Below, one piece after another: positions 9,417-40,200 of a stretch of 64,000 bases of DNA. The stretch is from the NCBI GenBank assembly GCA_002269645.1, contig NIVC01001021.1, positions 124,001-188,000 of the forward strand, in the 5' to 3' direction. Each line of letters opens with the position of its first letter. Position 1 is the first letter of the stretch. The DNA is from Macrostomum lignano (taxonomy: Eukaryota). The notes under the pieces were generated by a model. That model saw nothing but the letters and a program-made list of their open reading frames with translations. It was not told the DNA's origin and searched no databases. The translations under genes and the position numbers were made by a program.

Positions 9417-9418
9417 AT

Positions 9419-9428
9419 TGGTGGCAGC
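9419..9428 (+). promoter_or_regulatory. Primer-binding site TGGTGGCAGC (complementary to a tRNA-Leu-type 3' end)
   Basis: Lies 2 nt after the 5' LTR and begins with TGG. The tRNA assignment comes from recall of the Leu 3' end ...GCUGCCACCA. Confidence 0.7.
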
Positions 9429-15242: not shown

Positions 15243-15246
15243 CATT

Positions 15247-16074
15247 ATGGCTGATGCCCCGGAGCGCATTTATCCTATTAAAAAGATTTATTCCGGAAAA
15301 AGGAGACATGATTCAGACGAAAATGAACCCCCGAGAGTGCGCTCAGTAAGGGTGATAGAAACGGCTGACGAGCCCGAGAAACCCCATCCACGGGAAGAAC
15401 CGATTACGAAGGAAGAAGAAGGCGAAGGTAGATTAATAATAGATCTGGGAGGCGCAGATCTGGAAGCCGAGACAAGGAAGCAGGAAGAAGAGAGAAGAGA
15501 AGAGCACGATGAGTTTTTACGAATGTTGCTAGACGTTAGTCTGCCCGATATTGAAGAGGCCTTGAGCCCTGCCAATGAGGCACCAGTGGCAGAGGAACCA
15601 CCAAGCAATGATGTCCAAGAGCATAAGCCGGCTCCGGTGGCGGATGAGCCTCCCTTGGATGTCGCCGGACTATTTCGAGACGACGTACCACCGCCGAGCA
15701 ACCAAGACGCAGCGACCGAACCTTCCGGCGCCAGTCCAAGGAAGTTCCGGAAGTGCACCAAGGCCCTGAAAAGGTGGTTGCTGCAAACCGGCAACACGGG
15801 CTGGTACGATCCGACAGTGCCAGCGGCCTGCACACGATTTCTCGCTAAGGCTACGGCGGCGCAGCGCATCCAGAGCTTAGAGGTGGCCTGCACCTATGCG
15901 TTGCAGCATGCAGAGGAACGGGCGAAAGGACCAATATCACCGTACCAGGTGAGTGAACATCTACGCGACCTGGCAGAATTATTTGACCCGGAAGGCAAGA
16001 AAACGCCAGCAACCGGCCTGCTTTACCAGTGTGCACAGAGGGCGCCAACCTGCCGACCCCTAGGGAATCTTTGA
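15247..16074 (+). CDS. Third ORF of the Gypsy element (275 aa), function unknown, no signal peptide or TM segment
   Basis: ATG in good context (A at -3, G at +4), 13 nt after a branchpoint/polypyrimidine/CAG acceptor at 15211-15233. Acidic/Pro-rich N-half and helical C-half. Confidence 0.75.
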   Translation: MADAPERIYPIKKIYSGKRRHDSDENEPPRVRSVRVIETADEPEKPHPREEPITKEEEGEGRLIIDLGGADLEAETRKQEEERREEHDEFLRMLLDVSLPDIEEALSPANEAPVAEEPPSNDVQEHKPAPVADEPPLDVAGLFRDDVPPPSNQDAATEPSGASPRKFRKCTKALKRWLLQTGNTGWYDPTVPAACTRFLAKATAAQRIQSLEVACTYALQHAEERAKGPISPYQVSEHLRDLAELFDPEGKKTPATGLLYQCAQRAPTCRPLGNL

Positions 16075-16652
16075 GTTGAAAATTTAATAACCCAGGGATT
16101 AACTCTTCCATTGCTGCTAATTTCCTTACTACACAACCACACAGCTTTAATTTTTTTTCGATGTTGTATGCATTTTTACACAGTGCCATAGTGCCATTTA
16201 TTTTCTTTTTTTTCTCAAATTATTGCACCGCTTCTTTGCCTTATATATCTTTACATATCGATAATATTCAGGAAAGAAACCTATATGGTCATTGCCTATT
16301 TCATTAATCCCATTATGCTCAATTATTACTGTTCAATGCTCACATACTATTGCTCAACTAATATTGTATGGCTTAATTATCGTCGTTTACTTTCATTAAT
16401 CATGTACTCGTACTGTTTATTACTTTTGCTGATAGTATGCTATTATTATTACCTATACTGTATATTACTAATTAATCATACTATGTTCCATACTATGCTA
16501 TGCTACCACTACTCAGTTATTATTATTGCTTAATCATGCTCATTATATTGCTTATATTTAGTCCATGCATGCCACTATTAATACTGTCTGAATTACTTGA
16601 AATAAACCCGACAATAACTAAATATGCAAAGGGGTTTGCACATTTTTTTTTA

Positions 16653-19040: not shown

Positions 19041-19700
19041 CAGGTTGCACCTTTCTCCAGCCGCGTGCTAGCATGAAGAGTCTGCAAAGTCTGCACAGAT
19101 CTGCAGAAAGGAAATTTCTATGCTTATTACCCAGGCGCCACGTAGCTCAATCTGCACCTGGCTTCAAAGTGCTTGTCTTTCGCAGCAGATGGGACCATTC
19201 TTTTGCGCCCAGCATCAGACGTTTGTAACATTTTTCCCTCAGCAATTTTCAGTCGCCTACCCTGGATAAATCAGCTTTGACCGCACGTTTGTTTATAATT
19301 CCTGCTGAGAAAAGACAGCTGCTTGCAGAACCTTACCTATGCGTTCCACGCCTGATTAATAACCCTTAGTGGTACCTTTGAATTCGTTGTAGGTAAGGTA
19401 TAGTTTAGTAATCCATTATATTCCCTGTATCTATACAGCTGACTAGATTCATAACTTGTTTAAATTTTTTTTATTATTAAATTTGTTTAATTATTCATAA
19501 TTAAGATCCATAATTATATTCCTTCATCGATGACGTTGACTAGATTAGCAATCCAATTACATTCTCTGTATCAATACTCTTGGCTAGATTAGCAATCCAT
19601 TACTCTATTCATTTTCGATTCATTCAGTATTCAATTTCGCAACAACAGCAGTGGCAGCAGCAACAGCAGCAACAGCAGCAACAGCAGCAACAGCAGCAAC

Positions 19701-19769
19701 GGTGGGCAATGGGACCGCTTTCTCGTAGCGCCCCCGAGCACATGGATCCCCCATGTGGCGAAGTGTCCC
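19701..19769 (+). ncRNA. HDV-like self-cleaving ribozyme motif at the element 5' end
   Basis: P1 GGUGGGC/GCCC-CC, P2 GGGAC-C/GUGUCCC, P3 GCU/AGC, L3 UUCUCGU, P1.1 UC/GA, P4 CACAUGG/CCAUGUG, J4/2 GCGAA. P1 and P2 each lack one A. Confidence 0.8.
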
Positions 19770-19789
19770 TCCTTCCCCGGACAGCACGT

Positions 19790-22700
19790 ACGAAGAGCAA
19801 CGATTACGACAACGGCCCACCCGATCAGCGGGAAAGCGGGAACCTCGACCACGTCCTCCGCCTACGGGGCGGCAGCGACCCCCCGTCTAAAGGAAGCAGA
19901 CACGGCAACCGTCGCAACAGGCGCCATGCTAAAGCACTGGAAGAGCTCCTTATCCTACAGTTCAACTGTAACGGCATTAGAGCCAGGACTCCGGAACTAA
20001 CCAGGTGGCTGGATACGCATCGCCCTGCGGCAGTCCTTCTGCAAGAGACAAAACTAACGCCGGACACGAGCTACACCGCCCCGAGCGGCTATAGTGTAGC
20101 AGCCCGTGCCGACGGCAGCAACAAAATTGACATTTTCCCAGGCTCAGACGCCACCGAGAGCGCAACAGAAACTGCCACCGCCACCCGGCCATTCCAGCCC
20201 GGCGCCACGTGCACCGCCCGCACCTTCCCGCGAAGGCCACGGTGCCGTCTTCGCTGGCCTGATGACAGAACTGACTGGTGTAAAGGCTGCAGATCATCCC
20301 GATCGGCTTGCACCCGGCGCAATGAGCCATGGCCAGACGCGAAGGCCCAAATCGGCGCGGACAACCACAATAAAACCCAAAAAAATAACAACGCGCAATC
20401 CGGACCTGACCGCCACACGGCCACGACGCAACCAAACGATACAACCGGAGCGACGTCGGGACCCCTCGGCAAAAACACCACTGAAAAGCGGAAAAACAAA
20501 AACTTGCAACCCGGTCTCGACACCGCCTCCACATGGCTGTGCGCAGCCTGCAACAATATCATTACCAAACGCCAGACTAGCCTCCGCTGCAACCAGTGCT
20601 GGAACTGGCTACACCTGAAATGTAGCGGCCTCAAGCGCAGTAAAGACTGGAACGACGAATACATCGGAAGCTGCTGCTCGACACCACAAGATGCGAGCCG
20701 ATCCAGCACACCGTCAACATTGCCCAAGTCTACACCTAAAGATCCAGTAACGGTCAGACCAGCCAACCCGTCGACCCCACCGCAACGCCGCTCCAAGAGA
20801 GCCGGTCGGGAGGCGCCCTCATCATGGTCAGAAACGATATCAACTTCACCACCCTGCCCGACCAATCCAAAGCCGCACTTGATATTGCTGCGTGCACTCT
20901 CCACCTCAAAGGTCAAGGCGACCTCAACATCGCCAGTGTGTACGCTGCCCCTCACAGTGACCAACGCCAACATGAAGCCTGGACTCCGGATCTCTCTTGT
21001 ATACCGATAACGGGCAACACCGTCATAGGCGGAGATTTCAATTGTCACGGTTACTGGGACCCTTTCCAGCCCGGAGATACCAGGGGCGCCGAACTGGAAA
21101 CCTGGGCGAGTAATAACAACCTCAACATCGGCAACACCAGGAACTCTGCGACAAGACTCAACCCAGCGACGGGAGGCAAATCGGCACCGGACTGCACCTT
21201 GGCCCGAGGCCGTCCGAGCGCAGTTGTTTGCAGAACCTGGTCCACCGCTAAAGATCTTGGCTCCGATCATCTGCCTATCACCTTCTGCGTGCAAGCGCGT
21301 CGCCCTCATCGACAACAACGACAAGCGCAGTGGTCGTACAAGAAGGCGAATTGGCAGATATTTAAAGAGACCCTTCAAAATCATGTCCAGGACGCGGCGG
21401 AATCCCCCGAAGCAGAACACAAACGTATCTGCAAAGCCATACTGCAAGCCGCCGCAGCAGCTATCCCGAAGGGAGCCCGGAACGGCGCGCAGAACATTTC
21501 GAGACCTTTCTGGAATGACGAATGCGATACAGCGCTACACAGAAATCAGAAAGCCCGCAAAAATGTCGAAACAGATGCATTCGACACAAACATGCAGGAA
21601 CTCACACAAGCGCGCACGTGCCTTCGCAATACCATTCACAACGCCAAAAAAGAATTCTGGTCGGAAACGTGTAAAGAAATGAAGATAGACACCAATCTCT
21701 ACAGGACCCTCCGCAACATGAGAGGCGAAGCCAAACCACAAGCAACCAGCTCCACCATTAGCTATACCAACCCAACTTCTGGTAGGACTAAAGTGGCTAT
21801 CACTAAAAAGAATAAGGCCGACCTCTTCATGCAAATCTACGCTAAAGAATCCCGGCTAGATAAGGGAGACAACGACGAGGCTATAGTGAAAGAGGCTAAC
21901 CGCATCCTCCGCAACTGCAGAGCTACCGCCACCAACCACGGCCCGGAATCAGACTTTACTATCGGCGAATTCCGTCACATTATCCGCAGACTAAAATCCG
22001 GTAAATGCCCTGGCCCTGACCAGGTCAGCAATGAGATGTTGAAACAGCTCCCCCTGGCCATGGAGCTTCAGATCCTCAACCTTCTGAACAGAGTCTGGAA
22101 GGGTGACCAAGTCCCCACCGAATGGCGAAGAGCCACTATCATACCGATTCTTAAGAAGGACAAATCGCCAAGCTCACCGTCCTCGTACCGACCTATTGCC
22201 CTTACGAGCTCCATCTGCAAGGTCGGAGAGAAACTCGTACAGCAAAGACTTAACGCTTACCTCGAACGTGAACACAAACTGGCCCCAGAGCAGGCGGGCT
22301 TTCGCCAGGGCAGGAGCACCGAAGAGGTCCTCGCCCACACCTGCCAATCGATTTTTATGGTTTTGAGGAACAACCAGCGAAACGCTCTGCCATATGCCTA
22401 CTCGACTTCAGCAAGGCCTATGACAGAGTATGGCGCGCTGCTCTGACTGTTAAGCTATACGAGCTCACGGTACCTGCTAGATTCATCCTCTGGGTGCACA
22501 AATTCCTCAGAGACCGCCGCGCCAGGGTGAAATGGCAACAAACTATCAGCAGGGAAAGAGTCCTCGAAGAGGGCCTTCCACAAGGAAGCGTCATCGCCCC
22601 CACCCTGTGGACTACGTACGTCAACGACCTGCCGACGACCATAAAAAGGGCTAGCCCTGATTGTAAAATTAACCTATACGCCGACGACAGCTCACTGTTA

Positions 22701-24411
22701 GCCACCAGCAGGAAGCTAACGGACTGCGCCGACATCCTGCAACCAGCCATTGATGCGGCCGCCGAATGGTGTAAGCGGTGGAAGGTCACCCTCAGCACCG
22801 AGAAATGCATCTACTCGACCTTCACTCTCTCGCCACAAGAGAACAACGGCAAAGTCCGACTCAACCTGCACATTAACGGAGCCGAACTTAAATACGATCC
22901 GCACCCCGACTCCTAGGCCTGACCCTTGACGATCAGCTAACCTTCAACAAGCATGGAGCCGAGGTAAAGGCCCGCATGGCCCGGCGCAGAGGCGCACTCA
23001 CGGCCATTGCCCACCGCAACAGTGGAGCGGACCAAAACATCCTCCGCTCGGCCTATATCACCACTATCAGAGCGTGTGCAGACTACGGAAGCGGTATATG
23101 GCTAACCGGAGCAGCGCCTAGCACGCGACGCATGATCGAACAACAGCAGTCGATATGCGCGCGGATGATCACAGGCTGCTGCAGTACTACCCGCAACGAG
23201 ACCACGCTCAACATCGCCAGGCTCCCCCGATCGGCTCGATCGCCATAGAACGCGCGGCCATGCTTCGCGAGCGCATTCTTCGTCTCCCGCCGGACTGCCC
23301 GGCAGTGGATACCGCCGCCCGCTCGACGAGACCCCGCCTAAAAAACCGAAGCTATGACCCGCAAGACGAACCGGGAAGCGGAATAGGAGCCCGAGACCGA
23401 GAACGGCCACACCGCGGATGCTGGAGGAGGGCCGCACGAGAACTCCCTGTTGTAGCGACGCTCGATGAAATGGCGCGCGAGCAGATCATCATCGCCGCCC
23501 CCTGGGAAAGCGACACCAGCGCGGAAGTTATCTTCGACACAACGGCGAGTATGGTCAACCGCAAAGCCCCGGCAGAAGAACGCGCCAGAGCGGCCGACGC
23601 GGTCCTCAGAGCGGCCCAAGAGCTCGAGATCACGGCCTGGACGGACGGCTCCGCCAACGAAGGCTGCACCCACGGAGGGGGAGCGGCCGTGATCCACTAC
23701 AATGGTACCACTACTGAGCACCTAGCACCGGCCGGGACATACTGCAGCAGCTACCAAGCAGAAATGACTGCTATCGCAACCGCCCTTCGTGCCTCGTTGG
23801 AGCTACACGCCGCCGCCAACAGTATAGCCATCCTCACAGACAGCCTCAGCGCCCTGTCGGCACTGGCCCGCGGCCCGGCCGGCCAGCGTAATGCTGCCGG
23901 GCATGCCTGCAGGGACACCATCGCGAGAGCCACCTACTCCAAGGTCTACTTCGGATGGGTACCTGGCCACTGCCAGATTGCCGGCAACGAAGCGGCCGAC
24001 AGAGCGGCGGCTATGGCAGCTACCCTTCCGCAGAGCGAAGCTGCCATCACGTTAGACTCCGCGAGGGCTGCTATCCGCCGCGATCGCCGACGCCGCGACG
24101 CAGAGCCTACCAACCAGCCGTCACCCACCGACACCACCCGCAATCGACGCGAGCAGGTGTTGGTTAATCAACTCAGAGCGGGCGTCTCCACCATCTGCGC
24201 CGCCACCCGCCAACGTCTTGGTCTCCAAGAGGACGACAAGTGTAGTGACTGCGGCGCGGTGGACACGGCCGACCACCTCCTCCGCCGCTGCCCAAGAGGT
24301 GACGCCGCCAGAGCCCGCTACTTCGGCGTCGAGGACCCCCTATCGGCGCCGACAGGCCGGATCATCGCGTTCGTACGTGCTGTGGGGCGCCTGAGCCCCC
24401 GCCAATATTGA
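19790..24411 (+). pseudogene. Retrotransposon polyprotein (~1540 aa when reconstructed), broken by 4 apparent single-base deletions (~20806, ~22356, ~22908, ~23226)
   Basis: ORF track pieces 19580-21010, 20824-22446, 22494-22916, 22976-23248 and 23155-24411 join into one colinear protein if one base is added at each junction. Confidence 0.85.
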
Positions 24412-24484
24412 CGCCGAAGCGTCAACGGCGTGCCGGGAAACAGAAGAAGAAGAAGAAGAACAGCAGCAACAGCAGCAACAGCAG

Positions 24485-25200
24485 CCTCACATCCAGCAGG
24501 CCTCCGAGCAGCTCCAGACACTGGCTAGACCCCATCGGGGCTGGCCGCCAGTGCTGGACTGTCAGGCGTGGGGTGGAAGGTCCGTTGGCCACGGACACGA
24601 AAGCTGGAATTCCGGCCCCTCTGCTGGGGTTGACCCTGGTGGACCTGGTGGCAGGCTCACCGACATGCCCTCTGCACACTCACGCGGCGACGCGGTGGTG
24701 CAAGGCCCCTGTCCTATGGTGAGCGGGGCATTGACGGCTGGCTGTGCCATGTTGCAGTCAGACCGTTCCCGTAGGCCCATTGACCAGGTGACCCAGCGGG
24801 GCCGGCATCAACAACAACAGCAGCAACAGCAGCAACAGCCTCACATCCAGCAGGCCTCCGAGCAGCTCCAGACACTGGCTAGACCCCATCGGGGCTGGCC
24901 GCCAGTGCTGGACTGTCAGGCGTGGGGTGGAAGGTCCGTTGGCCACGGACACGAAAGCTGGAATTCCGGCCCCTCTGCTGGGGTTGACCCTGGTGGACCT
25001 GGTGGCAGGCTCACCGACATGCCCTCTGCACACTCACGCGGCGACGCGGTGGTGCAAGGCCCCTGTCCTATGGTGAGCGGGGCATTGACGGCTGGCTGTG
25101 CCATGTTGCAGTCAGACCGTTCCCGTAGGCCCATTGACCAGGTGACCCAGCGGGGCCGGCATCAACAACAACAACAACAGCAGCAACAGCAGCAACAGCA
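24485..25200 (+). mobile_element. Two identical tandem 354-bp-period units (unique parts 24485-24808 and 24839-25162), each ending in a (CAA)n tail
   Basis: Direct duplicate. Each ends ...GGGGCCGGCAT-CAACAACAAC and is bounded by CAG/CAA tracts. Probably the 3' end or a non-autonomous derivative of a second non-LTR family. Confidence 0.7.
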
Positions 25201-26304: not shown

Positions 26305-28155
26305 ACATATGGTACAGATTGTGTTGGTAAGTGTCTATGGTACAGATTGTGTTGGTAAGTGTCTATGGTACAGATTGTGTTGGTAAGTGTCTATGGTACA
26401 GATTGTGTTTGCAAGTGTCTATGGTACAGATTGTGTTTGCAAGTGTCTATGGTACAGATTGTGTTTGCAAGTGTCTATGGTACAGATTGTGTTGGTAAGT
26501 GTCTATGGTACAGATTGTGTTTGCAAGTGTCTATGGTACAGATTGTGTTTGCAAGTGTCTATGGTACAGATTGTGTTTGCAAGTGTCTATGGTACAGATT
26601 GTGTTTGCAAGTGTTAATGGTACAGATGTGTTTGCAAGTGTCTATGGTACAGATTGTGTTTGCAAGTGTCTATGGTACAGATTGTGTTTGCAAGTGTCTA
26701 TGGTACAGATTGTGTTTGCAAGTGTCTATGGTACAGATTGTGTTTGCAAGTGTCTATGGTACAGATTGTGTTGGTAAGTGTCTATGGTACAGATTGTGTT
26801 TGCAAGTGTCTATGGTACAGATTGTGTTTGCAAGTGTCTATGGTACAGATTGTGTTTGCAAGTGTCTATGGTACAGATTGTGTTTGCAAGTGTTAATGGT
26901 ACAGATGTGTTTGCAAGTGTCTATGGTACAGATTGTGTTTGCAAGTGTCTATGGTACAGATTGTGTTTGCAAGTGTCTATGGTACAGATTGTGTTTGCAA
27001 GTGTCTATGGTACAGATTGTGTTTGCAAGTGTTAATGGTACAGATGTGTTTGCAAGTGTCTATGGTACAGATTGTGTTTGCAAGTGTCTATGGTACAGAT
27101 TGTGTTTGCAAGTGTTAATGGTACAGATGTGTTTGCAAGTGTCTATGGTACAGATGTGTTTGCAAGTGTCTATGGTACAGATGTGTTTGCAAGTGTCTAT
27201 GATACAGATTGTGTTTGCAAGTGTCTATGGTACAGATTGTGTTTGCAAGTGTCTATGGTACAGATTGTGTTTGCAAGTGTCTATGGTACAGATTGTGTTT
27301 GCAAGTGTCTATGGTACAGATGTGTTTGCAAGTGTCTTATGGTACAGATTGTGTTTGCAAGTGTCTATGGTACAGATTGTGTTTGCAATTGTCTATGGTA
27401 CAGATTGTGTTTGCAAGTGTCTATGGTACAGATTGTGTTTGCAAGTGTCTATGGTACAGATTGTGTTTGCAAGTGTCTATGGTACAGATTGTGTTTGCAA
27501 GTGTCTATGGTACAGATGTGTTTGCAAGTGTCTTATGGTACAGGTCGTGTTCGCAAGTGTCTATGGTACAGATTGTGTTGGCAAGTGCCTATGGTACAGA
27601 TGTGTTTGCAAGTATCTATGGTACAGATGTGTTTGCAAGTGTCTATGATACAGATTGTGTTTGTAAGTGTCTATGGTATAGATTGTGTTGGCAAGTGTCT
27701 ATGGTACAGATTGTGTTTGCAAGTGCCTATAGTACAGATGTGTTTGCAAGTGTCTATGATACAGATGTGTTTGCAAGTGTCTATGGTACAGATTGTGTTG
27801 GCAAGTGCCTATGGTACAGATGTGTTTGCAAGTGCCTATGGTACAGATTGTGTTTGCAAGTGTCTATGGTACAGATTGTGTTTGCAAGTGTCTATGGTAC
27901 AGATTGTGTTTGCAAGTGTCTATGGTACAGATTGTGTTTGCAAGTGTCTATGGTACAGATTGTGTTTGCAAGTGTCTATGGTACAGATTGTGTTGGTAAG
28001 TGTCTATGGTACAGATTGTGTTTGCAAGTGTCTATGGTACAGATTGTGTTGGCAAGAGTCTATGGTACAGATTGTGTTTGAAAGTGTCTATGGTACAGAT
28101 TGTGTTCGCAAGTGTCTATGGTACAGATTGTGTTCGCAAGTGTCTATGGTACAAA
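26305..28155. repeat. 28-bp minisatellite (GTGTCTATGGTACAGATTGTGTTTGCAA), ~66 copies
   Basis: Read directly from the sequence. Explains ORFs 26359-28184. Confidence 0.97.
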
Positions 28156-28624: not shown

Positions 28625-28905
28625 ACAGCTCTACAGTACAGCTCTGGCGCTTCCTTACAGTATGGCTCTGGCGCTTCCTTACAGTATGGCTCTGGCGCTT
28701 TCTTTACAGTACGGCTCTGGCGCTTCCTTACAGTATGGCTCTGTCGCTTCCTTACAGTACAGCTTTGGCGCTTCCTTACAGTACAGCTCTGACGCCTCCT
28801 TACAGTATGGCTTTGGCGCTTCCTTACAGTATAGCTCTGGCGCCTCCTTACAGTATGGCTCTGGCGCTTCCTTACAGTTCAGCTCTGGCGCTTCCTTACG
28901 CCTGG
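28625..28905. repeat. 21-bp minisatellite (CTCTGGCGCTTCCTTACAGTA)
   Basis: About 13 copies. Confidence 0.9.
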
Positions 28906-29204
28906 CGCTGCTGCACCTAATACATGTGATATCATTATTGGGGGTTGCCTAGGGATCAAATTGATCTGGGCGGGTTTATAAGTCGTAGAAATAATTTATA
29001 CACGTATTGTCACTGAACTTACTTCATTATACGATTTGATTATACTTCACGATTCGATAGGCCAGATATGATTCGATAGAAACTATCGAATCGAACCCAG
29101 GATTGACGTGAGAGTTAATTGCGTCAGTGCTGGGCACCTCAGCCCCATCCGACCTCTGTCCTTATTGGTCCATTTCGAACTTCGATTTCAAAGCAATCCA
29201 CGGG

Positions 29205-29210
29205 TATAAA
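29205..29210 (+). promoter_or_regulatory. TATA box of the neuropeptide gene
   Basis: TATAAA ~100 nt upstream of the ATG at 29312, with a reverse CCAAT (ATTGG, 29164) and TGACGTG (~29104) further upstream. Confidence 0.5.
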
Positions 29211-29311
29211 TACAGTTTGGAGAGTCAAGAATTTCATGCTTCGCTTCACAGTAGTTTGACCCTTGAGATACATGTAACTGAGAAAGCTTATACAGTTGAG
29301 CAGCTTTAAGC

Positions 29312-29554
29312 ATGAGTCGCTACGGTTTTGTACTTGTTCTGCTGCTGCATGTAGTAGGCGTGCTTGCGCCTGTGCAGGCCGCTCCTTGGAACAGCCGAAT
29401 GCTTTGGTACTCGACGCAGCTGTCCTACCAGCCTCTGCTACAGAGTCGGCACTCAAACCAGCCGGCCAGTTCCGGAGACAACAGCTGGCGTTTCTGGCGG
29501 AATGGACCGAATGGATATCGCTGGGGCAGCAGAATGCGCTTTGGAAAGCGCTAG
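29312..29554 (+). CDS. RFamide-type neuropeptide precursor (80 aa)
   Basis: N-terminal signal peptide MSRYGFVLVLLLHVVGVLAPVQA and C-terminal ...WGSRMRF-G-KR-stop (amide-donor Gly plus dibasic site). GC-rich ORF in an AT-rich context. Confidence 0.8.
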   Translation: MSRYGFVLVLLLHVVGVLAPVQAAPWNSRMLWYSTQLSYQPLLQSRHSNQPASSGDNSWRFWRNGPNGYRWGSRMRFGKR

Positions 29555-32143
29555 CTAGCTGGCGGATGCTCATTTTGAGCTGCTGAGAGCTCGGTCTCTC
29601 GGAGACAGTGTCTGTTTTCTGTTTGTATAACATCGCGCTTTAATTTTTTAAGAACAAATACGTGCATGTACCACTTGTTGTTTCGTTTCAAGCACTTCGA
29701 AAATTTGACATCAAAAGTTTTTGTGGTGACCACAGTAACAAATAAGTCAGAAAAAACCTACCTAATTTGTGCTTTTGCAATTCGAAGTTTAAACTTTTTT
29801 CGATTTCTCAATGTAATTTTTTCCGGTAAACTTTAATGTTAGCTCGTCCTTCCTGCACTTACTTAAACACCCACTTTAAAAAACTATATGCTGTGTCAAA
29901 ACATTGTAACATATCAAAAATACATCAATTTTTCTCTGAATCTAAAATTACTTCAATAATTCGCTTTTAGTGCGTAAAAGTGATTTGTGAAAAAAAAGAT
30001 TTTGTTTTATTTGTTTACTTTTTTAAAATCGAGAAAGGTTAAGCTAAATAAATTTCTGTTGAAATAAAGTATAATTTATCGATTGTCTTTAAACTTTCAC
30101 AAATATATGTACAGGTATTATACGAGTAGAAGGATGCATAAAAGAAAATGATTAAGCTGTCCATTTTGACGCACTACGCAGTAATCTGTTTGCGTTGTAT
30201 AAAGCCTTTTCTACTGAAGCAAAGACGCCGTAATAAACATAAGTAGTCATATTGAGTAGTATACACGGCAAAACGCACTATGCGCGTATAAAATATCAAT
30301 TCACCGAGAGAACCACTGAATATGAATAAGCGATTAATATGCAAAAGAACCGACTTGACTGGGGTGATAATGTAAATTTGATGGAGAAAAACATACGAGT
30401 AAAACAAAAAGGAAAAAAACTCAGAATTGAACTCCTTGAACTTTTATAAAAAAGAAAGAAATCAAAATTGGAAAAACTACGATCGTATTTAAACTTCTCC
30501 TGTGAGCAGATAACCATTTAATTCATTTAGGAAACAATATTCGATTAAAAACACAATAAAACATGCAAGAGAGAATATTAACAAAATGTTTTATAGAAAC
30601 AAAACAAAAAAATTACAACACAAAAGATATTGAAATGGTGTTTTAAAAGCGATTTAAAAAAACTGCATGTTCATCAAGCGCACGAGCCATATTTCTTGGA
30701 TAAGATTTACAGCAATTTGCAAAACTGCATGTGTCTTGAATAGAATATTCGGTAGTGCTTCGTGAGCCCGTTTTCCAGCGGAGTATAAGAATTCAAGTGA
30801 GTACAAAATGACGGGTAAATGCTCACAATGATCGAATGCTATATGGATGAAAAGTAAAAACTAATGCAACGCGGAAACGTGGAGCCAATTATAGAGAAAT
30901 GGAAAGACAGTGTGATTAGACAAACGTAATGAATGTAATATGAATATCAATGTCCATTTACAAGCACTCGTATTGTGCTGATTTATTTACATTATGCAGT
31001 AGTAACTTTTGTACACTTCTTATGCCAGAATAATGGTCGATTACTTTGGTCACGAAAACTTTCATTCGCTTTTAACTTTTTTTGCACTTGAATTTAAGTT
31101 TCTAAACATTGATCCTCGACGTATCGATAAAATTACTGTAACTCAGACGACTATCCACTTGCCCGCGAGCTGGTTGTAGTTTCTTAGAAAATTTTAGTTA
31201 CTGCACGAAGCATGTAGCTTTGCGCAAAAATACACTGCGGAGAGAGGAAGTTTTCATTTATCTATTCTGCAGAAAAATAGCGATATAGTTTTTAAGATAG
31301 ACAGAACAGATTTAGTATATTGTGATTATAACTTGGAGAATGCCCAGGTTTCAGTGTAGCCGCTTGTGGCTTTTGGTTGATGGAAATTGAGAAAAAATTA
31401 TTAAATAAAGTAAAAGTCTACATTTAAAAATATAAAATATGCGATAAAAGTATATATGAAAAATTCAAATAAACTTTTTACTAAAAATCCATCGTATGTG
31501 AAATTATTACACGTGTCTTTGCAGTGAATTTTTCGAGTGAAACCAGCCCGGAAATGTTTTCTAAGAAACGAAGTTTTTATCCCAAGTCGTCTTTGGCGTG
31601 CAAAGTTCTGAAAACTAAACGAATCGCCAGCAATTTTCCATTTTTACGGTGGCAAAAAGAATTTAAAAATAATTTTAGATAAAACGCCTGGCCTTGCTTA
31701 TTTTTAAAGTTTTGTTCCTTTCAGAAGATGACTTTTACGTTTCTCTAAAGCAAAGAAGGCTTTTTCTCCGGACATTTTCATACAGTACCGGAAATTATTC
31801 TCTTTGAATGCTTTCAAGACTGGAAACTGGCTAAATCTCGCTACCACACAAGCATTGATTGAAGGTAAAATTTGAATCTCAATGGGCTATAAACGATCAA
31901 AGGTTTTTAATTACATGTAGTTTTGATTTTTCCTGTTTTCAACTGTATAACTACTTACAGTAATCTAGCTATAGCGTAACGCTCGTATATTACTACAGTC
32001 TGCAGAAATATTCAATCCACAGCACTAAAATGCTACCAAAATTCAAAAAATTTCTGCGGGTAAGCATTGTTGCCTCTTTGCCTATAATCACTGTCAAAGA
32101 TATTTTCGATACATATCGGCTCAAATTCTACTTTACCTCGAGC

Positions 32144-34385
32144 TTAGCACAGCGGAGTGTCAAACAGCAGGTAGTTCTTGAGCACAGTCGGCAGCGGCAG
32201 CTCGCCCACCGACTTGGGCAGTGGAGCTGGAAGCCGGTCGCGAATCAGCACCCGGCACAGGCGCATCAGGGACGTACTGGTCAGGCTGAACACCAGGGCC
32301 TTTTGCTCCGGCCCGATCCGGGACATTTTAGCGATGGCAGCTCGGTCAACCTTGACTGCGGCGGATAATAGCAGCTCGGCCAGTTGAGCATTCTCCGGAT
32401 TGTTCAACACGCGGGACAGGTGGCCTTGAACACCGTATCTGAGAGGGGGGCATTTAATTCGTAAATGTACATGTGCTTATTGAAAGAAAATGCAAAGAGA
32501 AGTTGTAATTTTGCACCTTTATTCCCCTGGCACTTCTACCTGTACATCCTCATGATGTATTATAAACTGATGTATTGTAAATGTACAGAGACCATCATAG
32601 ACTCACGTACATCCTCATTCAGACCACCATAGACTCACCTGCATCCTCATTCAGACCATAGACTCACCTGCATCCTCATTCAGACCACCATAGACTCACC
32701 TGCATCCTCATTCAGACCACCATAGACTCACCTGCATCCTCATTCAGACCATAGACTCACCTGCATCCTCATTCAGACCATAGACTCGCCTGCATCCTCA
32801 TTCAGACCACCATAGACTCACCTGCATCCTCATTCAGACCACCATAGACTCACCTGCATCCTCATTCAGACCATAGACTCGCCTGCATCCTCATTCAGAC
32901 CATACATTCACCTGCATCCTCATTCAGACCATACATTCACCTGCATCCTCATTCAGACCATCATAGACTCGCCTGCATCCTCATTCAGACCATACATTCA
33001 CCTGCATCCTCATTCAGACAACCATGTACTCACCTGCATCCTCATACCGACCATAGACTCACCTGCATCCTCATTCAGACCATACACTCACCTGCATCCT
33101 TATTAAGACCATAGACTCATGCTCATCCTCATGCATCCTCATGCTGCAGGCCCTGTATCCACGCCCTTCATTACCTAAGAGCATGAACTGAAGTCAATCC
33201 CCAAGGTATATTAAAAAGTGAGCAACTGACATTCTCTCACCTGTCCAACAGAGTGTACCCGCAAGCTCCCTGACAAAGATTGATTTTGGCTCCAAACTGT
33301 ACCAGCAGGTACACAGTAAAGGCGTCGAGCTCCTCGTTGCAGCCGAGGTATTCAACTAGCGGCGGCAGGCAGGGTGCATCCAGGCAGATCTTGTCCTTGA
33401 CGTTGCTATGCTGATTCGGCCGCGCCCCGGCGTCTAATAGCAGTTTGAGCAGCACGTTGCGACTCTCGAGTCGAACTACGGAGCACAGAAACTGCAGCGG
33501 GTAGATTTCGTATCTGCCCGACTGGTTTGGCCGATTCGGGTCGGCTCGATTGCGCAACAGGCAGCACAGCATAGGCGGACTGTTTAGCTTGATGGCCAGC
33601 TCCAGCGCTGTCGTGTCGTTCTGCACAAACTGGTCGGGATCGGCGCCGCTGTTCAGCAGCAGCTGCATAAGGTCGGTACGCCGGTTCTTCATCGCGTAGA
33701 ACATGGCCGACTTGCCGCCGAAAGCGAATGACGAACGTAGGTCGACGTTGGCCTTGTGGCACAGCAGCACCATGGCGGCTTCCAGCCGGCTCTCCTTACA
33801 GGCGCGCATCAGCGGGCTGAGGCCCCAACGGTTGAACGTGTCCGGATTGGCTCCGGCTCTGAGCAGCAGCTCGAGGCAGAGCAGATTCTCCAGGCTCATC
33901 ACCGAGACCAGGTCGCCCATGAAGTAGCGACAGTTCGGATTGGCGCCAAGCCGCAGCAGGGCCTCCACGCACAGCAGGTGGCCGTTCTCCACAGCGTAGG
34001 ACAGCGGGTCCTCGACCGTGTCCTCGGCCGGGATGTCGGCGAAGTCCGCGTCGCGACGATCGTAGCAGTTCGGGCGCTGCCAGTGCAGGCGAGCGCCGGC
34101 CTCGGCCAGTGCCACCAGGGCGCCCGTGCTGCCCCGGCGAGCGGCGATGTGAATCGGCGACAGTCCCTCCTCGTCGGCGCAGTTCAGATTGCAGCCGTGC
34201 TTAATCAGCAGCTGCAGCAGCTGCAGCTTGTTGTAGTGAGCCGCGTAGTGCACCAGCGACATGCCTTTGACGCGGATCTGGCTCAGGCAGACGCGGCCGC
34301 TAGCCAGGAGCAGCTGAAGGTCAGCCGCTGGTTTGTCGCTGCGCACCGCGTAGGCAAACAGCTTTGTGAAGTCGGCCGTTTCCAT
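32144..34385 (-). CDS. Ankyrin repeat and SOCS box protein (ASB-like), 479 aa; exons 34385-33241 and 32438-32144
   Basis: Multiple ankyrin repeats (GLSPIHIAA, PLSYAVENG, GLSPLMRAC, TALELAI). The phase-2 GT-AG intron joins in frame. SOCS box SLMRLCRVLIR...LPLPTVLKNYL. Confidence 0.92.
32590..33125. repeat. 29/32-bp intronic minisatellite (ACCATAGACTCACCTGCATCCTCATTCAG)
   Basis: Lies inside ASB intron 32439-33240. Confidence 0.92.
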
Positions 34386-35237
34386 CTTCTTCTACTCGTA
34401 GCGAGCTGGCTAATATTTTTTCTCCCGGTGCAACGAAATTCTGTCGCGGTCCTGGCCAGCCTTGGTGCCGTCGGTTTCGGGATATTTCTACTTGATTTCT
34501 CCTCCACTCTCCCCCCCCCTCAGTTCTTGCCCGTCGAGTGTTCGCGCGGGTCACGCGGGAAGAAGCGAACTACAGTTGGAAAACCGGGGAAGGGTAAGAA
34601 GGGAAGGGAGGTGGGTTGGCCAGCATCAGCTGACACAACGAACTGGATCAGCTGACTTCCATCCGGTTGCGTCTCCTAGCGCACTTTCGCCGTCCTGCTA
34701 AGCCTAACTGCAAAGAACGCTGCATGGTTGCCATGCAATGTCTGCGTCGATGTAGTTCGATAGCTACCGATATTCTGTTCTCTAAAAATTAGTCTATTAT
34801 TTATTCATAGGCTTGAATGGTATTTTAAGATTCTTCTACTATAGCTGCCATTCCTAGCGGTTGTTACAACGACAACACCAACAAGTGACTCGGTTCCAGT
34901 TGTTGGTCGGGAGCTTTAATATCTGTTTGTCTTGAAGGCAAGTTTTGAGACATTGGCTCAAACAGATTAGCTGAGCTGTTGTCTTATAATAGCTGTTCCT
35001 GGCCCCCTCAGGTGCCAGAAGCCGTTGCATTTACCAGTCAGCTATATCATGTGATAACTGTTCCATCCAGCACAAAACAAGCGAAGCATCACGTGCACCC
35101 GATGGTAAAACTTTTCGCATTCCAAATCTTTCTTTCCCGCTTTGGTCGTATCCTGGGTCTATATGTACTTTTATTTGCATCCCTGACCCAGCAAAGTCAG
35201 TATAGAAACTATTTATAGTGAACCGCTATTTTTTAGC

Positions 35238-36245
35238 GCTACAGACAATGATTTTGTGTCGCTACTGACAATGATTTTGTGTCGCTACTGACAATGATTT
35301 TGTGTTTGTGTCGCTACTGACAATGATTTTGTGTCGCTACTGACAATGATTTTGTGTCGCTACTGACAATGATTTTGTATCGCTACTGACAATGATTTTG
35401 TGTTTGTGTCGCTACTGACAATGATTTTGTGTCGCTACTGACAATGATTTTGTGTCGCTACTGACAATGATTTTGTGTCGCTACTGACAATGATTTTCTG
35501 TCGCTACTGACAATGATTTTGTGTTTGTGTCGCTACTGACAATGATTTTGTGTCGCTACTGACAATGGTTTTGTGTCGCTACTGACAATGATTTTGTGTC
35601 GCTACTGACAATGATTTTCTGTCGCTACTGACAATGATTTTGTGTCGCTACTGACAATGATTTTCTGTCGCTACTGACAATGATTTTGTGTTTGTGTCGC
35701 TACTGACAATGATTTTGTGTCGCTACTGACAATGGTTTTGTGTCGCTACTGACAATGATTTTGTGTCGCTACTGACAATGATTTTCTGTCGCTACTGACA
35801 ATGGTTTTGTGTCGCTACTGACAATGATTTTGTGTCGCTACTGACAATGATTTTCTGTCGCTACTGACAATGATTTTGTGTTTGTGTCGCTACTGACAAT
35901 GATTTTGTGTCGCTACTGACAATGATTTTGTATCGCTACTGACAATGATTTTGTATCGCTACTGACAATGATTTTGTATCGCTACTGACAATGATTTTGT
36001 ATCGCTACTGACAATGATTTTGTGTTTGTGTCGCTACTGACAATGATTTTGTGTCGCTACTGACAATGATTTTGTATCGCTACTGACAATGATTTTGTTT
36101 CGCTACTGACAATGATTTTGTATCGCTACTGACAATGATTTTGTATCGCTACTGACAATGATTTTGTATCGCTACTGACAATGATTTTGTGTTTGTGTCG
36201 CTACTGACAATGGTTTTGTGTCGCTACTGACAATGGTTTTGTGTC
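35238..36245. repeat. 23-bp minisatellite (CTACTGACAATGATTTTGTGTCG) with recurring 29-bp variant
   Basis: Read directly from the sequence. Confidence 0.95.
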
Positions 36246-36987
36246 GCGCTGATTTTTTGTATTAAACTTTCCTAGCTACGTAGGTTGTTTTAGGATATTT
36301 TCTTTTTCCTTTAAAACGGATATAAATATGATACCGTTCCACGCTACTGTGCGATAGTAGGCAGTGTAAAACTTGATATAGAATATTTAAACCGAAAAAA
36401 TATTGTAAAACCGAAAGCCCACCTAGAAATCCAGGCACTAAAATAAGGCTAATCAAAATGTGTTTATATTTTGTTATTCTACGAGATCGCCTGATTTTCG
36501 GCTTTAAAGGGTCGCTTAACTTCACAGGTGTGAAGGCCTTGGTGTAAACTAATTAAATGAGCCACCTAATGATAATTACCTGTCAAAAACTACATCCAAG
36601 CTTTAGTCAATAAAACAATTGTTAATTTTATTATGGCTAACAAGTGACAATATCGTTTCCGCTATCTGCCAGTGGGTAGCCAGCGATTTGAATTCCAACT
36701 ATTCAGGTTAGGTTTAGGGGTTTAGATGAGAGCTTAGATTAGAGTTAGTCAGTTTTCATCCGTAATATTCTCCTTGCTGGGCCTAAAAGCATAATAGCCT
36801 AATAGCCTAATTAACTAATCGCGCTCCTAATAGTCTTGCTTTGTACTGATTCCGCATATTTTAGTCAGTTCAATATAATCCTATTTAAGAATATTAAAAA
36901 TACATTTATATATAATTATCTGATGTTGCCACTGTATCTGCGGTCCTTGACTGCATCAAGGATGTAAATTTTAGTTGCAAGATAAAC

Positions 36988-37299: not shown

Positions 37300-40200
37300 G
37301 TCTACCCTCTGTCTACCTCTCAGTCTATACTTTTGTCTACTTTCTGTCTACCTCTCAGTCTACACTTTTGTGTCTACTTTCTGTCTACCTCTCAGTCTAC
37401 ACTTTTATCTACTTTCTGTGTACCTCTCAGTCTACACTTTTGTCTATTTTCTGTCTACCTCTCAGTCTACACTTTTGTCTATTTTCTGTCTACCTCTCAG
37501 TCTACACTTTTATCTACTTTCTGTGTACCACTCAGTCTACACTTTTGTCTATTTTCTGTCTACCTCTCAGTCTACACCTACTTTCTGTCTACCTCTCAGT
37601 CTACACTTTTGTGTCTACTTTCTGTGTACCTCTCAGTCTACACTTTTGTCTATTTTCTGTCTACCTCACAGTCTACACTTTTGTCTACTTTCTGTCTACC
37701 TCTCAGTCTATACTTTTGTGTCTACTTTCTGTCTACCTCTCAGTCTATACTTTTGTGCCTACTTTCTGTCTACCTCTCAGTCTACACTTTTGTGTCTACT
37801 TTCTGTCTACCTCTCAGTCTACACTTTTATCTATTTTCTGTCTACCTCTCAGTCTACACTTTTATCTACTTTCTGTGTACCACTCAGTCTACACTTTTGT
37901 CTACTTTCTGTCTACCTCTCAGTCTACACTTTTGTGTCTACTTTCTGTCTACCTCTCAGTCTATACTTTTGTGTCTACTTTCTGTCTACCTCTCAGTCTA
38001 CACTTTTGTGTCTACTTTCTGTCTACCTCTCAGTCTATACTTTTGTGTCTACTTTCTGTCTACCTCTCAGTCTACACTTTTATCTACTTTCTGTGTACCT
38101 CTCAGTCTACACTTTTATCTACTTTCTGTGTACCTCTCAGTCTACACTTTTGTCTATTTTCTGTCTACCTCTCAGTCTACACTTTTGACTATTTTCTGTC
38201 TACCTCTCAGTCTACACTTTTATCTATTTTCTGTGTACCTCTCAGTCTACACTTTTGTCTACTTTCTGTGTACCTCTCAGTCTACACTTTTATCTACTTT
38301 CTGTGTACCTCTCAGTCTACACTTTTGTCTATTTTCTGTCTACCTCTCAGTCTACACTTTTATCTACTTTCTGTGTACCTCTCAGTCTACACTTTTGTCT
38401 ATTTTCTGTCTACCTCTCAGTCTACACTTTTATCTACTTTCTGTGTACCACTCAGTCTACACTTTTGTCTATTTTCTGTCTACCTCTCAGTCTACACCTA
38501 CTTTCTGTCTACCTCTCAGTCTACACTTTTATCTACTTTCTGTGTACCTCTCAGTCTACACTTTTATCTACTTTCTGTGTACCACTCAGTCTACACTTTT
38601 GTCTATTTTCTGTTTACCTCTCAGTCTACACCTACTTTCTGTCTACCTCTCAGTCTACACTTTTGTCTACTTTCTGTCTACCTCTCAGTCTACACCTTCT
38701 TTCTGTCTACCTCTCAGTCTACACTTTTATCTACTTTCTGTCTACCTCTCAGTCTACACTTTTATCTACTTTCTGTGTACCTCTCAGTCTACACTTTTGT
38801 CTACTTTCTGTCTACCTCTCAGTCTACACTTTTGTCTACTTTCTGTCTACCTCTCAGTCTACACTTTTATCTACTTTCTGTCTACCTCTCAGTCTACACT
38901 TTTATCTACTTTCTGTGTACCTCTCAGTCTACACTTTTATCTACTTTCTGTGTACCACTCAGTCTACACTTTTGTCTACTTTCTGTCTACCTCTCAGTCT
39001 ACACTTTTGTCTACTTTCTGTCTACCTCTCAGTCTACACTTTTATCTACTTTCTGTCTACCTCTCAGTCTACACTTTTGTCTACTTTCTGTGTACCTCTC
39101 AGTCTACACTTTTATCTACTTTCTGTGTACCTCTCAGTCTACACTTTTGTCTATTTTCTGTCTACCTCTCAGTCTACACTTTTGTCTACTTTCTGTCTAC
39201 CTCTCAGTCTACACTTTTGTGTCTACTTTCTGTCTACCTCTCAGTCTATACTTTTGTGTCTACTTTCTGTCTACCTCTCAGTCTACACTTTTGTGTCTAC
39301 TTTCTGTCTACCTCTCAGTCTATACTTTTGTGTCTACTTTCTGTCTACCTCTCAGTCTACACTTTTATCTATTTTCTGTGTACCTCTCAGTCTACACTTT
39401 TGTCTACTTTCTGTGTACCTCTCAGTCTACACTTTTATCTACTTTCTGTGTACCTCTCAGTCTACACTTTTGTCTATTTTCTGTCTACCTCTCAGTCTAC
39501 ACTTTTATCTACTTTCTGTGTACCTCTCAGTCTACACTTTTGTCTATTTTCTGTCTACCTCTCAGTCTACACTTTTATCTACTTTCTGTGTACCTCTCAG
39601 TCTACACTTTTGTCTATTTTCTGTCTACCTCTCAGTCTACACTTTTATCTACTTTCTGTGTACCACTCAGTCTACACTTTTGTCTATTTTCTGTTTACCT
39701 CTCAGTCTACACTTTTGTCTACTTTCTGTCTACCTCTCAGTCTACACTTTTATCTACTTTCTGTCTACCTCTCAGTCTACACCTTCTTTCTGTCTACCTC
39801 TCAGTCTACACTTTTATCTACTTTCTGTGTACCTCTCAGTCTACACTTTTATCTACTTTCTGTGTACCACTCAGTCTACACTTTTGTCTATTTTCTGTCT
39901 ACCTCTCAGTCTACACTTTTATCTACTTTCTGTCTACCTCTCAGTCTACACTTTTATCTACTTTCTGTGTACCTCTCAGTCTACACTTTTGTCTACTTTC
40001 TGTCTACCTCTCAGTCTACACTTTTGTCTACTTTCTGTCTACCTCTCAGTCTACACTTTTATCTACTTTCTGTCTACCTCTCAGTCTACACTTTTATCTA
40101 CTTTCTGTGTACTTCTCAGTCTACACTTTTATCTACTTTCTGTGTACCACTCAGTCTACACTTTTGTCTACTTTCTGTCTACCTCTCAGTCTACACTTTT

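What the first reader, a model, noticed from the sequence alone, without database searches (positions are those of the whole stretch)
29060..29554. Compact RFamide neuropeptide gene, probably unannotated
An 80-aa ORF has a clean signal peptide and a single C-terminal ...NGPNGYRWGSRMRF-GKR, predicting an amidated RMRFamide peptide whose N-terminus depends on monobasic Arg cleavage. A TATA box, CCAAT and CRE-like site lie upstream, with a perfect 10-bp inverted repeat GATTCGATAG-aaa-CTATCGAATC near 29070. I cannot assign the Trp-rich sequence to a named family.
Basis: partly seen in the sequence, partly recalled or inferred. Interest (0 to 1): 0.7.

Follow-up and report, generated by a model that had tools for sequence, protein, structure and literature searches.

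The report
Unannotated flatworm RFamide peptide gene candidate
A small single-exon gene in the flatworm Macrostomum lignano probably makes a secreted Trp/Arg-rich peptide ending in amidated -RMRF; it is missing from the public annotation and kept in a second genome copy, but nothing yet shows it is expressed or neuronal.

Summary
Window 29312-29554 (+) is an 80-codon ORF with a typical signal peptide (cleavage predicted VQA|AP) that ends ...YRWGSRMRF-GKR-stop. The 10-bp inverted repeat, a TATA box, an inverted CCAAT and a TGACG half-site all lie upstream.

The window is Macrostomum lignano, a free-living flatworm. Two further genomic versions of the locus were recovered from assembly GCA_002269645.1, and neither has a gene called there.
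- Promoter plus ORF form a local conservation peak (ORF 95-98% identical; 54-69% just past the stop).
- The ORF is a GC island at exon level.
- 6 of 10 substitutions are at third codon positions, and dN/dS is about 0.2-0.4 on few events.
- Four control ORFs in an equally conserved non-coding block nearby are all broken in the other copies.
- One copy keeps ...GSKMRFGKR-stop. The other carries a 1-nt insertion that destroys the RF-GKR end.

No relative was found in 5.8 billion or 1.84 billion proteins, in Pfam or in metagenomes. The closest described motif is nematode flp-27 (G[G/S]RMRFamide).

Verdict: probably a real, unannotated, lineage-restricted RFamide-type prepropeptide gene. The default product is a 54-residue amide. 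Transcription, neuronal expression and family assignment remain unshown. A host-defence or gland peptide, or a non-coding chance ORF, remain live rivals.

The parts
29050..29093 (.). Three copies of the motif (C)GATTCGATAG: direct at 29050-29060 and 29070-29079, inverted at 29083-29093. The last two form the perfect 10-bp inverted repeat with a 3-nt spacer (29070-29092). Possible upstream transcription-factor site; function unknown.
   Evidence: 0 expected in shuffles. Intact in L001. In L002 the right arm is removed by a 9-nt deletion and the middle copy is mutated, so it is not essential to the conserved unit, or L002 is decaying.
29104..29126 (.). Pair of bZIP-type half-sites in inverted orientation: TGACG (29104) and CGTCA (29122).
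   Evidence: TGACG is kept in all three copies. CGTCA is kept in L001 and replaced by TGAGTCA (an AP-1-type heptamer) in L002. Function is inferred from consensus only.
29164..29168 (-). Inverted CCAAT box (ATTGG on the + strand).
   Evidence: Present at the same aligned position in all three copies.
29205..29212 (+). TATA box TATAAATA, 100 nt upstream of the ATG. The predicted transcription start is about 29235-29245 (inferred).
   Evidence: The surrounding 29137-29233 block is 89-96% identical among copies.
29312..29380 (+). Signal peptide, codons 1-23 (MSRYGFVLVLLLHVVGVLAPVQA); predicted cleavage VQA|AP.
   Evidence: heuristic n/h/c rule. Paralogues differ only by V7L and an in-frame loss of one Val in the h-region.
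29381..29542 (+). Propeptide and default mature peptide, codons 24-77: APWNS...YRWGSRMRF. It has 54 residues, 5 Trp, 7 Arg, net charge +6 and no Cys.
   Evidence: The last 14 residues are identical in L001 except R74K.
29543..29554 (+). Amidation/trimming signal Gly78-Lys79-Arg80, followed directly by the TAG stop.
   Evidence: Identical nucleotides in L001. In L002 the same 19 nt are present but shifted out of frame by a 1-nt insertion at codon 75.
29741..29746 (+). AATAAG, a candidate variant poly(A) signal about 187 nt after the stop. No canonical AATAAA lies between it and the stop.
   Evidence: Retained at the aligned position in all three copies, within otherwise poorly conserved sequence. 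Function is inferred.

Best explanation
This is a compact, single-exon, TATA-driven gene of Macrostomum lignano that encodes an 80-residue prepropeptide.

Shown:
- The ORF, its signal-peptide-like start and its RF-Gly-Lys-Arg-stop end.
- Preservation of the ORF and promoter motifs in a second genomic copy.
- Absence of the gene from the public annotation.

Inferred mechanism:
- Transcription starts about 30 nt after the TATA box and gives an unspliced mRNA of roughly 0.5 kb.
- The product enters the secretory pathway and the signal peptide is removed after Ala23.
- Because the stop follows GKR directly, no endoproteolytic cut is needed at the C-terminus. A carboxypeptidase E-type enzyme trims Arg80 and Lys79, and peptidylglycine alpha-amidating monooxygenase converts Gly78 into the amide of Phe77.
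- The default product is a 54-residue, Trp/Arg-rich, strongly basic peptide ending in -RMRF-NH2 (-KMRF-NH2 in the paralogue).
- Shorter forms (NGPNGYRWGSRMRFamide, WGSRMRFamide) are possible but not favoured.
- It would be released as a neuropeptide or hormone and act through its RxRFamide end on an RFamide-type G-protein-coupled receptor.

It is a lineage-restricted orphan by sequence.
For: - ORF anatomy.
- Organism: a neighbouring ORF is 100% identical to M. lignano BOX15_Mlig009209g2.
- Three syntenic versions of the locus exist.
- ORF identity is 95.1/94.7/98.3%, against 69/61/54% in the 146 nt after the stop and 79-86% in the putative 5'UTR. There is a sharp drop at the stop codon in the sliding profile.
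- The only length difference between the window and L001 inside the ORF is an in-frame 3-nt indel.
- 6 of 10 substituted sites are third codon positions.
- NG86 dN/dS is 0.37 and 0.23.
- The ORF is a GC island (57%, against 41% upstream and 35% downstream) at the level of host exons (57-62%), and frame +0 has the best codon score of the six frames.
- Negative control: in an equally conserved non-coding block (30161-31246), all four window ORFs are broken in the other copies.
- TATAAA, ATTGG, TGACG and AATAAG are retained in all three copies.
- M. lignano has a nervous-system-expressed prohormone convertase 2 homologue (PMC4490696) and uses MRFamide-type peptides (YMRFamide propeptide Mlig001796.g3; PMC9234716).
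- G[G/S]RMRFamide is a described FLP ending in nematodes (flp-27; PMC4058706).
Against: - No transcript, peptide or expression evidence could be obtained.
- No homologue was found outside the three copies of one species, so cross-species conservation is untested.
- The dN/dS signal rests on about 11 events. The permutation p is 0.09.
- High identity is not unique to the ORF in this locus (block 30161-31246). L001 and L002 are far more alike in the ORF than in the flanks, which gene conversion could also explain.
- The L002 copy is frameshifted before RF-GKR.
- The Trp/Arg-rich cationic composition fits a host-defence peptide as well as a neuropeptide.
Confidence: 0.5

Rival explanations
1. It is a real secreted, amidated peptide but not a neuropeptide. 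It would be a cationic Trp/Arg-rich host-defence (antimicrobial-type) peptide, or a gland or seminal-fluid peptide, made by epidermal, gut or reproductive gland cells. The RF-amide end would be incidental to an R/W/F-rich composition.
For: - The mature region has net charge +6, 5 Trp in 54 residues (6 in the paralogue), no Cys and an amidated C-terminus.
- The variable positions R63W and R74K/I lie in the cationic/aromatic C-terminal half.
- It is an orphan with no relatives, as is common for fast-evolving defence and reproductive peptides.
- From general knowledge: Trp/Arg-rich amidated linear peptides such as indolicidin-type peptides are a recognised antimicrobial class, and GKR-type amidation signals occur in their precursors.
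Against: - The N-terminal 35 residues of the mature region are polar and uncharged, and the peptide is not amphipathic-helical in composition (Gly/Pro/Asn-rich; GRAVY -1.2).
- The last four residues form the RxRFamide pattern typical of receptor ligands and match a described FLP ending.
- dN/dS is below 1 rather than above 1.
Confidence: 0.17
2. It is not a protein-coding gene. A chance ORF lies inside a conserved non-coding element (an enhancer/promoter of a neighbour, or a non-coding RNA), and the signal-peptide-like start and RFGKR end are coincidental.
For: - The locus contains another block (30161-31246) with the same 91-99% identity and no coding potential.
- The dN/dS test is not significant on its own (p = 0.09).
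- One of the three copies is frameshifted.
- No annotation pipeline called a gene here.
- My rough estimate of chance occurrences of such an ORF genome-wide is of order 0.1-1.
Against: - The conservation boundary coincides with the stop codon.
- The GC island matches exon composition.
- Substitutions are biased to third positions, and the one indel between the window and L001 is in-frame.
- 4 of 4 control ORFs in the conserved non-coding block are broken in the paralogues, whereas this one is intact in L001.
- A TATA box is conserved at the right distance.
- Rfam finds no RNA family.
Confidence: 0.25
3. The real gene is the 164-codon antisense ORF (29139-29633, minus strand), and the plus-strand ORF is its shadow.
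For: It is the longest ORF over the region and is also open in L001.
Against: - 6 of 10 substitutions fall on its second codon position, so nearly all would change the protein.
- In L002 it has no start codon and is frameshifted.
- It runs through the TATA/CCAAT block.
- It has no Pfam match, and its frame scores worse in codon usage.
Confidence: 0.03

Closest known systems
Nematode flp-27 (FMRFamide-like peptide 27; C. elegans GLGGRMRFamide; family consensus [G/T/S/A][K/L/M]G[G/S]RMRFamide)
   Same: The last six residues of the candidate, G-S-R-M-R-F-amide, fall inside the published consensus (PMC4058706). Both precursors are small and carry a single RFamide peptide followed by Gly plus a dibasic pair.
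   Different: - The match is six residues only. Whole-precursor searches find no similarity.
- flp-27 is described only in nematodes, and its precursor carries a further non-FLP peptide after the cleavage site. Here the stop follows GKR.
- The candidate's peptide is Trp-rich and probably much longer.
- Homology versus convergence cannot be decided.
NPF / NPY and short NPF (RxRF/Y-amide peptides; flatworm NPF ends GRPRFamide; arthropod sNPF ends RLRFamide)
   Same: The C-terminal R-x-R-F-amide pattern; one amidated peptide per precursor; the peptide begins right after the signal peptide, as in NPF/NPY (family features from general knowledge).
   Different: - 54 residues rather than about 36-40.
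- No Tyr at -10/-17 (Tyr is at -9).
- Gly/Pro/Asn-rich where NPF has its amphipathic helix.
- No C-terminal flanking peptide.
- No Pfam hormone-family hit.
Spiralian FMRFamide-type precursor (in M. lignano: YMRFamide propeptide Mlig001796.g3)
   Same: The -MRF-Gly-Lys-Arg processing unit, and the same species uses MRFamide peptides (PMC9234716).
   Different: Classical FMRFamide genes encode many tandem tetrapeptide copies with an aromatic residue at -4. Here there is one copy, Arg/Lys at -4, and a long N-terminal extension.
Trp/Arg-rich linear amidated host-defence peptides (indolicidin/tritrpticin class)
   Same: Cationic (+6), Trp-rich, Cys-free, with an amidated C-terminus made from a Gly plus basic signal.
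   Different: Much longer, with a polar uncharged N-terminal half. There is no sequence relation and no activity data.

Membership tests
Amidated secretory-peptide precursor (generic prepropeptide) | N-terminal signal peptide | tested here: met
   n/h/c regions and V-x-A at -3/-1 by a simple rule. Only 3 of 153 window ORFs pass it. SignalP itself was not available.
Amidated secretory-peptide precursor (generic prepropeptide) | Peptide followed by Gly plus basic residue(s) as the amidation/trimming signal | tested here: met
   ...RMRF-G-K-R-stop; the only such ORF in the window.
Amidated secretory-peptide precursor (generic prepropeptide) | Reading frame and processing signal conserved in relatives | tested here: inconclusive
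   Kept in L001 (...GSKMRFGKR-stop). Lost in L002 through a +1 insertion at codon 75, which may be a pseudogene or an assembly indel. No other species was available.
Neuropeptide (functional class) | Transcribed in neurons; peptide detectable; acts on a receptor | not testable with these tools
   No transcriptome, expression or peptidome data can be reached. The exact product is not on record in the assembly collection.
Nematode flp-27 | C-terminal G[G/S]RMRFamide, one FLP per precursor | tested here: met
   GSRMRF-GKR, single copy (compared with the consensus in PMC4058706). The paralogue has GSKMRF, which is outside the consensus.
Nematode flp-27 | Detectable precursor homology / orthology | tested here: not met
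   0 hits at E<=1e-3 in 1.84 billion representatives and none in the word-index search. Short precursors may simply be beyond detection.
NPF/NPY family | About 36-40-residue peptide with a PP-fold helix, Tyr at -10 and -17, RxRF/Y-amide, and a C-terminal flanking peptide | tested here: not met
   Only the RxRF-amide end and the position after the signal peptide fit. Length is 54, Tyr is at -9, an NGPNG segment is present, the stop follows GKR, and there is no Pfam hit.
FMRFamide-type multi-copy precursor | Multiple tandem [FY][ML]RF-Gly-dibasic units | tested here: not met
   A single RFG[KR][KR] unit, with Arg/Lys at -4.
Luqin / RYamide family | Amidated peptide directly after the signal peptide, plus a C-terminal precursor domain with two conserved Cys | tested here: not met
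   There is no Cys anywhere in the 80 residues, and the amidated end is at the very C-terminus. The family features are from general knowledge.
Trp/Arg-rich antimicrobial peptides | Cationic, Trp-rich, membrane-active, antimicrobial in assay | tested here: inconclusive
   Composition fits (+6, 5 Trp). Activity and the expression site are not testable here.

The most novel reading that the evidence does not exclude
A Macrostomum-lineage-specific (possibly recently born) long, Trp-rich RxRFamide hormone with no detectable relatives. It would define a new flatworm neuropeptide family. Its GSRMRFamide end would make it either a deep orthologue of nematode FLP-27 signalling or the missing ligand for one of the orphan RFamide receptors or FaNaC-related DEG/ENaC channels of M. 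lignano, which did not respond to FMRFamide or YMRFamide (PMC9234716).
Probability: 0.12. Interest if true: 0.6.

Novelty: new member of a known kind. Interest (0 to 1): 0.38.

Why it matters
Macrostomum lignano is a transgenic, regenerating flatworm model from an early-branching flatworm lineage, and its neuropeptide complement is only partly catalogued.

Small single-exon prepropeptide genes are routinely missed by annotation pipelines. This one is absent from the public gene set.

If it is expressed in neurons, it would add an orphan RFamide ligand with an unusual long Trp-rich body. That ligand could be used for receptor deorphanisation, for RNAi and transgenic study of peptidergic control in flatworms, and for asking whether the nematode FLP-27-type ending is ancient or convergent.

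If it is not neuronal, it would be a candidate host-defence or gland peptide.

Either way this is an incremental addition, not a new principle.

Tried and rejected
- Word-index protein search with the 80-aa product: 1 candidate, nothing at E<=10.
- Pfam: no family.
- Exact-sequence look-up in public assemblies: not on record.
- Exhaustive HMMER against 1.84 billion representatives: 0 hits.
- Metagenome scan: 308 pattern matches, none confirmed.
- Rfam on the whole window: nothing.
- Literature strings:
  - RMRFamide appears only as a synthetic analogue inactive on locust muscle.
  - RMRFG, MRFGKR, KMRF and similar strings gave nothing for flatworms.
  - RMRFa led only to nematode flp-27.
- McVeigh et al. 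2009 (PMC2749192), the flatworm neuropeptide survey that included M. lignano ESTs, is not held. Koziol et al. 2016 is not in the library either. I therefore cannot exclude that the peptide is listed there.
- The supplements of PMC9234716 do not hold the Mlig propeptide sequences.
- Antisense 164-aa ORF: rejected.
- The +2-frame 96-aa TTG ORF: no Pfam hit and a worse codon score.
- NPF, luqin and multi-copy FMRFamide membership: rejected on defining features.
- A kisspeptin-like resemblance (Y-x-W-x-S...RF-amide, 54 residues) was considered. I dropped it as a recollection-level motif similarity that needs a gap.
- Identification of the nearby DEG/ENaC exon: no protein at E<=1e-20. My threshold was too strict to list distant relatives, so the subfamily remains unknown.
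- Structure prediction was not attempted, because a short, Gly/Pro-rich, alignment-less peptide would give no usable model.

Full report
**What is there**

- The N-terminus has a basic n-region, a 15-residue hydrophobic core and V-Q-A at -3 to -1.
- The product has no Cys.
- Its only dibasic site is the terminal Lys-Arg, preceded by Gly and followed directly by TAG.

The inverted repeat GATTCGATAG-aaa-CTATCGAATC is real (29070-29092; none expected in shuffles), and a third, direct copy of the arm lies at 29050-29060.

Upstream motifs:
- TATAAA at 29205.
- An inverted CCAAT (ATTGG) at 29164.
- TGACG at 29104, with an inverted CGTCA at 29122.

Of 153 ATG-ORFs of at least 50 aa in the window, only this one combines a signal-peptide-like start with a G[KR][KR] site, and it is the only one containing RFG[KR][KR].

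**Whose genome**

The window is animal DNA, dense in minisatellites and transposons. The ORF at 33237-34385 (-) is 100% identical to Macrostomum lignano BOX15_Mlig009209g2, an ankyrin-repeat/SOCS-box protein. The candidate therefore lies about 2.6 kb beyond the 3' end of that gene, in convergent orientation.

**Related copies**

Looking up that protein returned two loci of assembly GCA_002269645.1: L001 (NIVC01002254.1) and L002 (NIVC01000415.1). In each, the ankyrin gene is the only gene called within 10 kb. The window is a third version of the locus, 90% and 83% identical to them around the candidate. Each version holds exactly one copy of the ORF.

**Conservation test**

| Segment | win-L001 | win-L002 | L001-L002 | Source |
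|---|---|---|---|---|
| ORF 29312-29554 | 95.1% | 94.7% | 98.3% | |
| Proximal promoter 29101-29240 | 96.5% | 91.4% | 88.1% | |
| Putative 5'UTR 29241-29311 | 78.9% | 85.9% | 86.2% | |
| 146 nt after the stop (29555-29700) | 69.2% | 60.7% | 53.6% | |

- The sliding profile shows the drop exactly at the stop codon.
- Inside the ORF, the only length difference between the window and L001 is an in-frame loss of one Val codon in the signal peptide.
- 6 of 10 substituted sites are third codon positions, 3 are first and 1 is second.
- NG86 dN/dS is 0.37 (window-L001) and 0.23 (window-L002).
- There are only about 11 events, and a permutation test gives p = 0.09. Taken alone this is suggestive, not proof.
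- The ORF is a GC island (57%, against 41% upstream and 35% downstream) matching the host exons in the window (57-62%). Frame +0 has the best codon-usage score of the six frames.

**A caveat and a control**

High identity is not unique to the ORF. An AT-rich block at 30161-31246 is 91-99% identical among the copies and has no coding potential. I used it as a control. All four window ORFs of at least 50 aa in that block are broken by frameshifts or stops in L001 and L002, whereas the RFamide ORF is intact in L001 and intact up to codon 74 in L002.

**The RF-GKR end in relatives**

- L001 encodes ...NGPNGYRWGSKMRFGKR-stop, so the end is kept with a conservative R74K change.
- L002 has a single extra C at codon 75. 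The frame then reads ...WGSIIALWKAL... and the RF-GKR end is lost, although the following 19 nt are identical to the other copies.
- L002 also lacks the right arm of the inverted repeat and has TGAGTCA in place of CGTCA.
- Two explanations remain: L002 is a very recently disabled copy, or the insertion is an assembly error. Read data would decide.

**Rival frames**

The 164-codon antisense ORF (29139-29633) fails:
- The same substitutions fall mostly on its second codon position.
- It lacks a start codon and is frameshifted in L002.
- It runs across the TATA block.
- It has no Pfam match.

**Processing**

Because the stop follows GKR, carboxypeptidase trimming and amidation suffice to produce an -RMRF-NH2 end. 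This step is inferred from the established prohormone pathway. A pc2 homologue expressed in the M. lignano nervous system is documented (PMC4490696).

I checked every internal Arg against the classical monobasic-site rules, recalled from Devi 1991: a basic residue at P4, P6 or P8, no aromatic residue at P2, and no aliphatic residue at P1'. None passes all three.
- R63 sits in an R-F-W-R (RxxR) context, but it is Trp in both paralogues.
- R70, whose cleavage would give WGSRMRFamide, has Tyr at P2.

The default product is therefore the 54-residue amide A24-F77, with net charge +6 and 5 Trp.

**Comparison with known families**

No sequence relative exists in the 5.8-billion-protein word-index search, in an exhaustive HMMER scan of 1.84 billion representatives, in Pfam or in JGI metagenomes. 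The exact product is not on record.

In the held literature:
- RMRFamide occurs as a synthetic analogue.
- It also occurs as the ending of nematode flp-27, consensus [G/T/S/A][K/L/M]G[G/S]RMRFamide, one FLP per precursor. The candidate's GSRMRF-amide fits the last six positions. Six residues cannot establish homology.

The RxRFamide end also recalls NPF and sNPF. NPF membership fails on length, Tyr spacing, helix-incompatible composition and the missing C-terminal flanking peptide. Multi-copy FMRFamide-type and luqin-type architectures are also not met.

M. lignano does have annotated YMRFamide and RWamide/PWamide propeptides, so amidated RF-type signalling exists in this animal.

**Verdict**

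The most likely reading (about 0.5) is a genuine, unannotated, lineage-restricted gene for a secreted, amidated RFamide-type peptide acting as a neuropeptide or hormone.

Live rivals:
- The same gene product serving as a Trp/Arg-rich host-defence or gland peptide (about 0.17).
- A chance ORF in a conserved non-coding element (about 0.25).
- The antisense ORF (about 0.03).

Expression, the mature form, the receptor and cross-species conservation are all untested. Two key flatworm neuropeptide surveys could not be read, so prior description cannot be fully excluded.

I rate it as a new member of a known kind, of moderate interest.

Noticed in passing
window 30161-31246: An AT-rich (about 33% GC) block between the RFamide ORF and the ankyrin/SOCS gene is 91-99% identical among the three locus versions, as conserved as the ORF. 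It has no preserved ORF and no Rfam match. It could be a long 3'UTR, an enhancer, a non-coding RNA or a gene-conversion tract.
   Followed up: partly
L002 14466-14699 (minus strand of the locus; NIVC01000415.1): This copy of the RFamide ORF carries a 1-nt insertion at codon 75 that removes the RF-GKR end. It also has a 9-nt deletion of the right arm of the upstream inverted repeat. It is either a recent pseudogene or an assembly indel.
   Followed up: partly
window 50080-51012 (-): A large exon of a DEG/ENaC (amiloride-sensitive sodium channel, PF00858) gene lies about 20 kb from the RFamide ORF. No protein in the collection matches it at E<=1e-20, so it also seems absent from the public M. 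lignano protein set. Some DEG/ENaC channels are RFamide-gated, but the proximity is probably coincidental.
   Followed up: partly
window 32144-34385 (-): Ankyrin-repeat plus SOCS-box gene. Its large exon (33237-34385) is 100% identical to the first 382 residues of M. lignano BOX15_Mlig009209g2. The same 479-aa protein is on record at both other loci, although the DNA is only about 94-95% identical.
   Followed up: yes
window ~7270-16080 (+): LTR-retrotransposon-type element. It has a gag-like ORF with a zinc knuckle (9837-10847) and a 1235-aa pol with protease region, RT, RNase H and integrase (10913-14620).
   Followed up: no
window ~19580-24411 (+), with a 354-bp unit repeated 2.1 times at 24459-25190: Non-LTR retrotransposon remnants: an endonuclease/exonuclease/phosphatase domain, RT and RNase H split over several ORFs, with Gln-codon repeats at both ends.
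   Followed up: no
window 61872-63020 (+): Mariner/Mos1-type transposase ORF (HTH_48 plus a partial DDE domain).
   Followed up: no
window 26308-28153, 28632-28899, 35237-36247, 37300-42376, 43800-44617, 47600-48482, 49094-49959, 54403-55689, 56303-56977 and others: An exceptional load of minisatellites with 12-35-bp units, including one array of about 145 copies of a 35-bp unit spanning 5 kb. They generate many long spurious ORFs. The 24-bp array at 28632-28899 ends 150 nt before the candidate's conserved upstream block.
   Followed up: no
window 29053, 29072, 29085 (inverted), 29181: The hexamer TTCGAT recurs four times in the 260 nt upstream of the TATA box. Three of the four are kept in all three copies; the inverted one is lost in L002.
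   Followed up: partly
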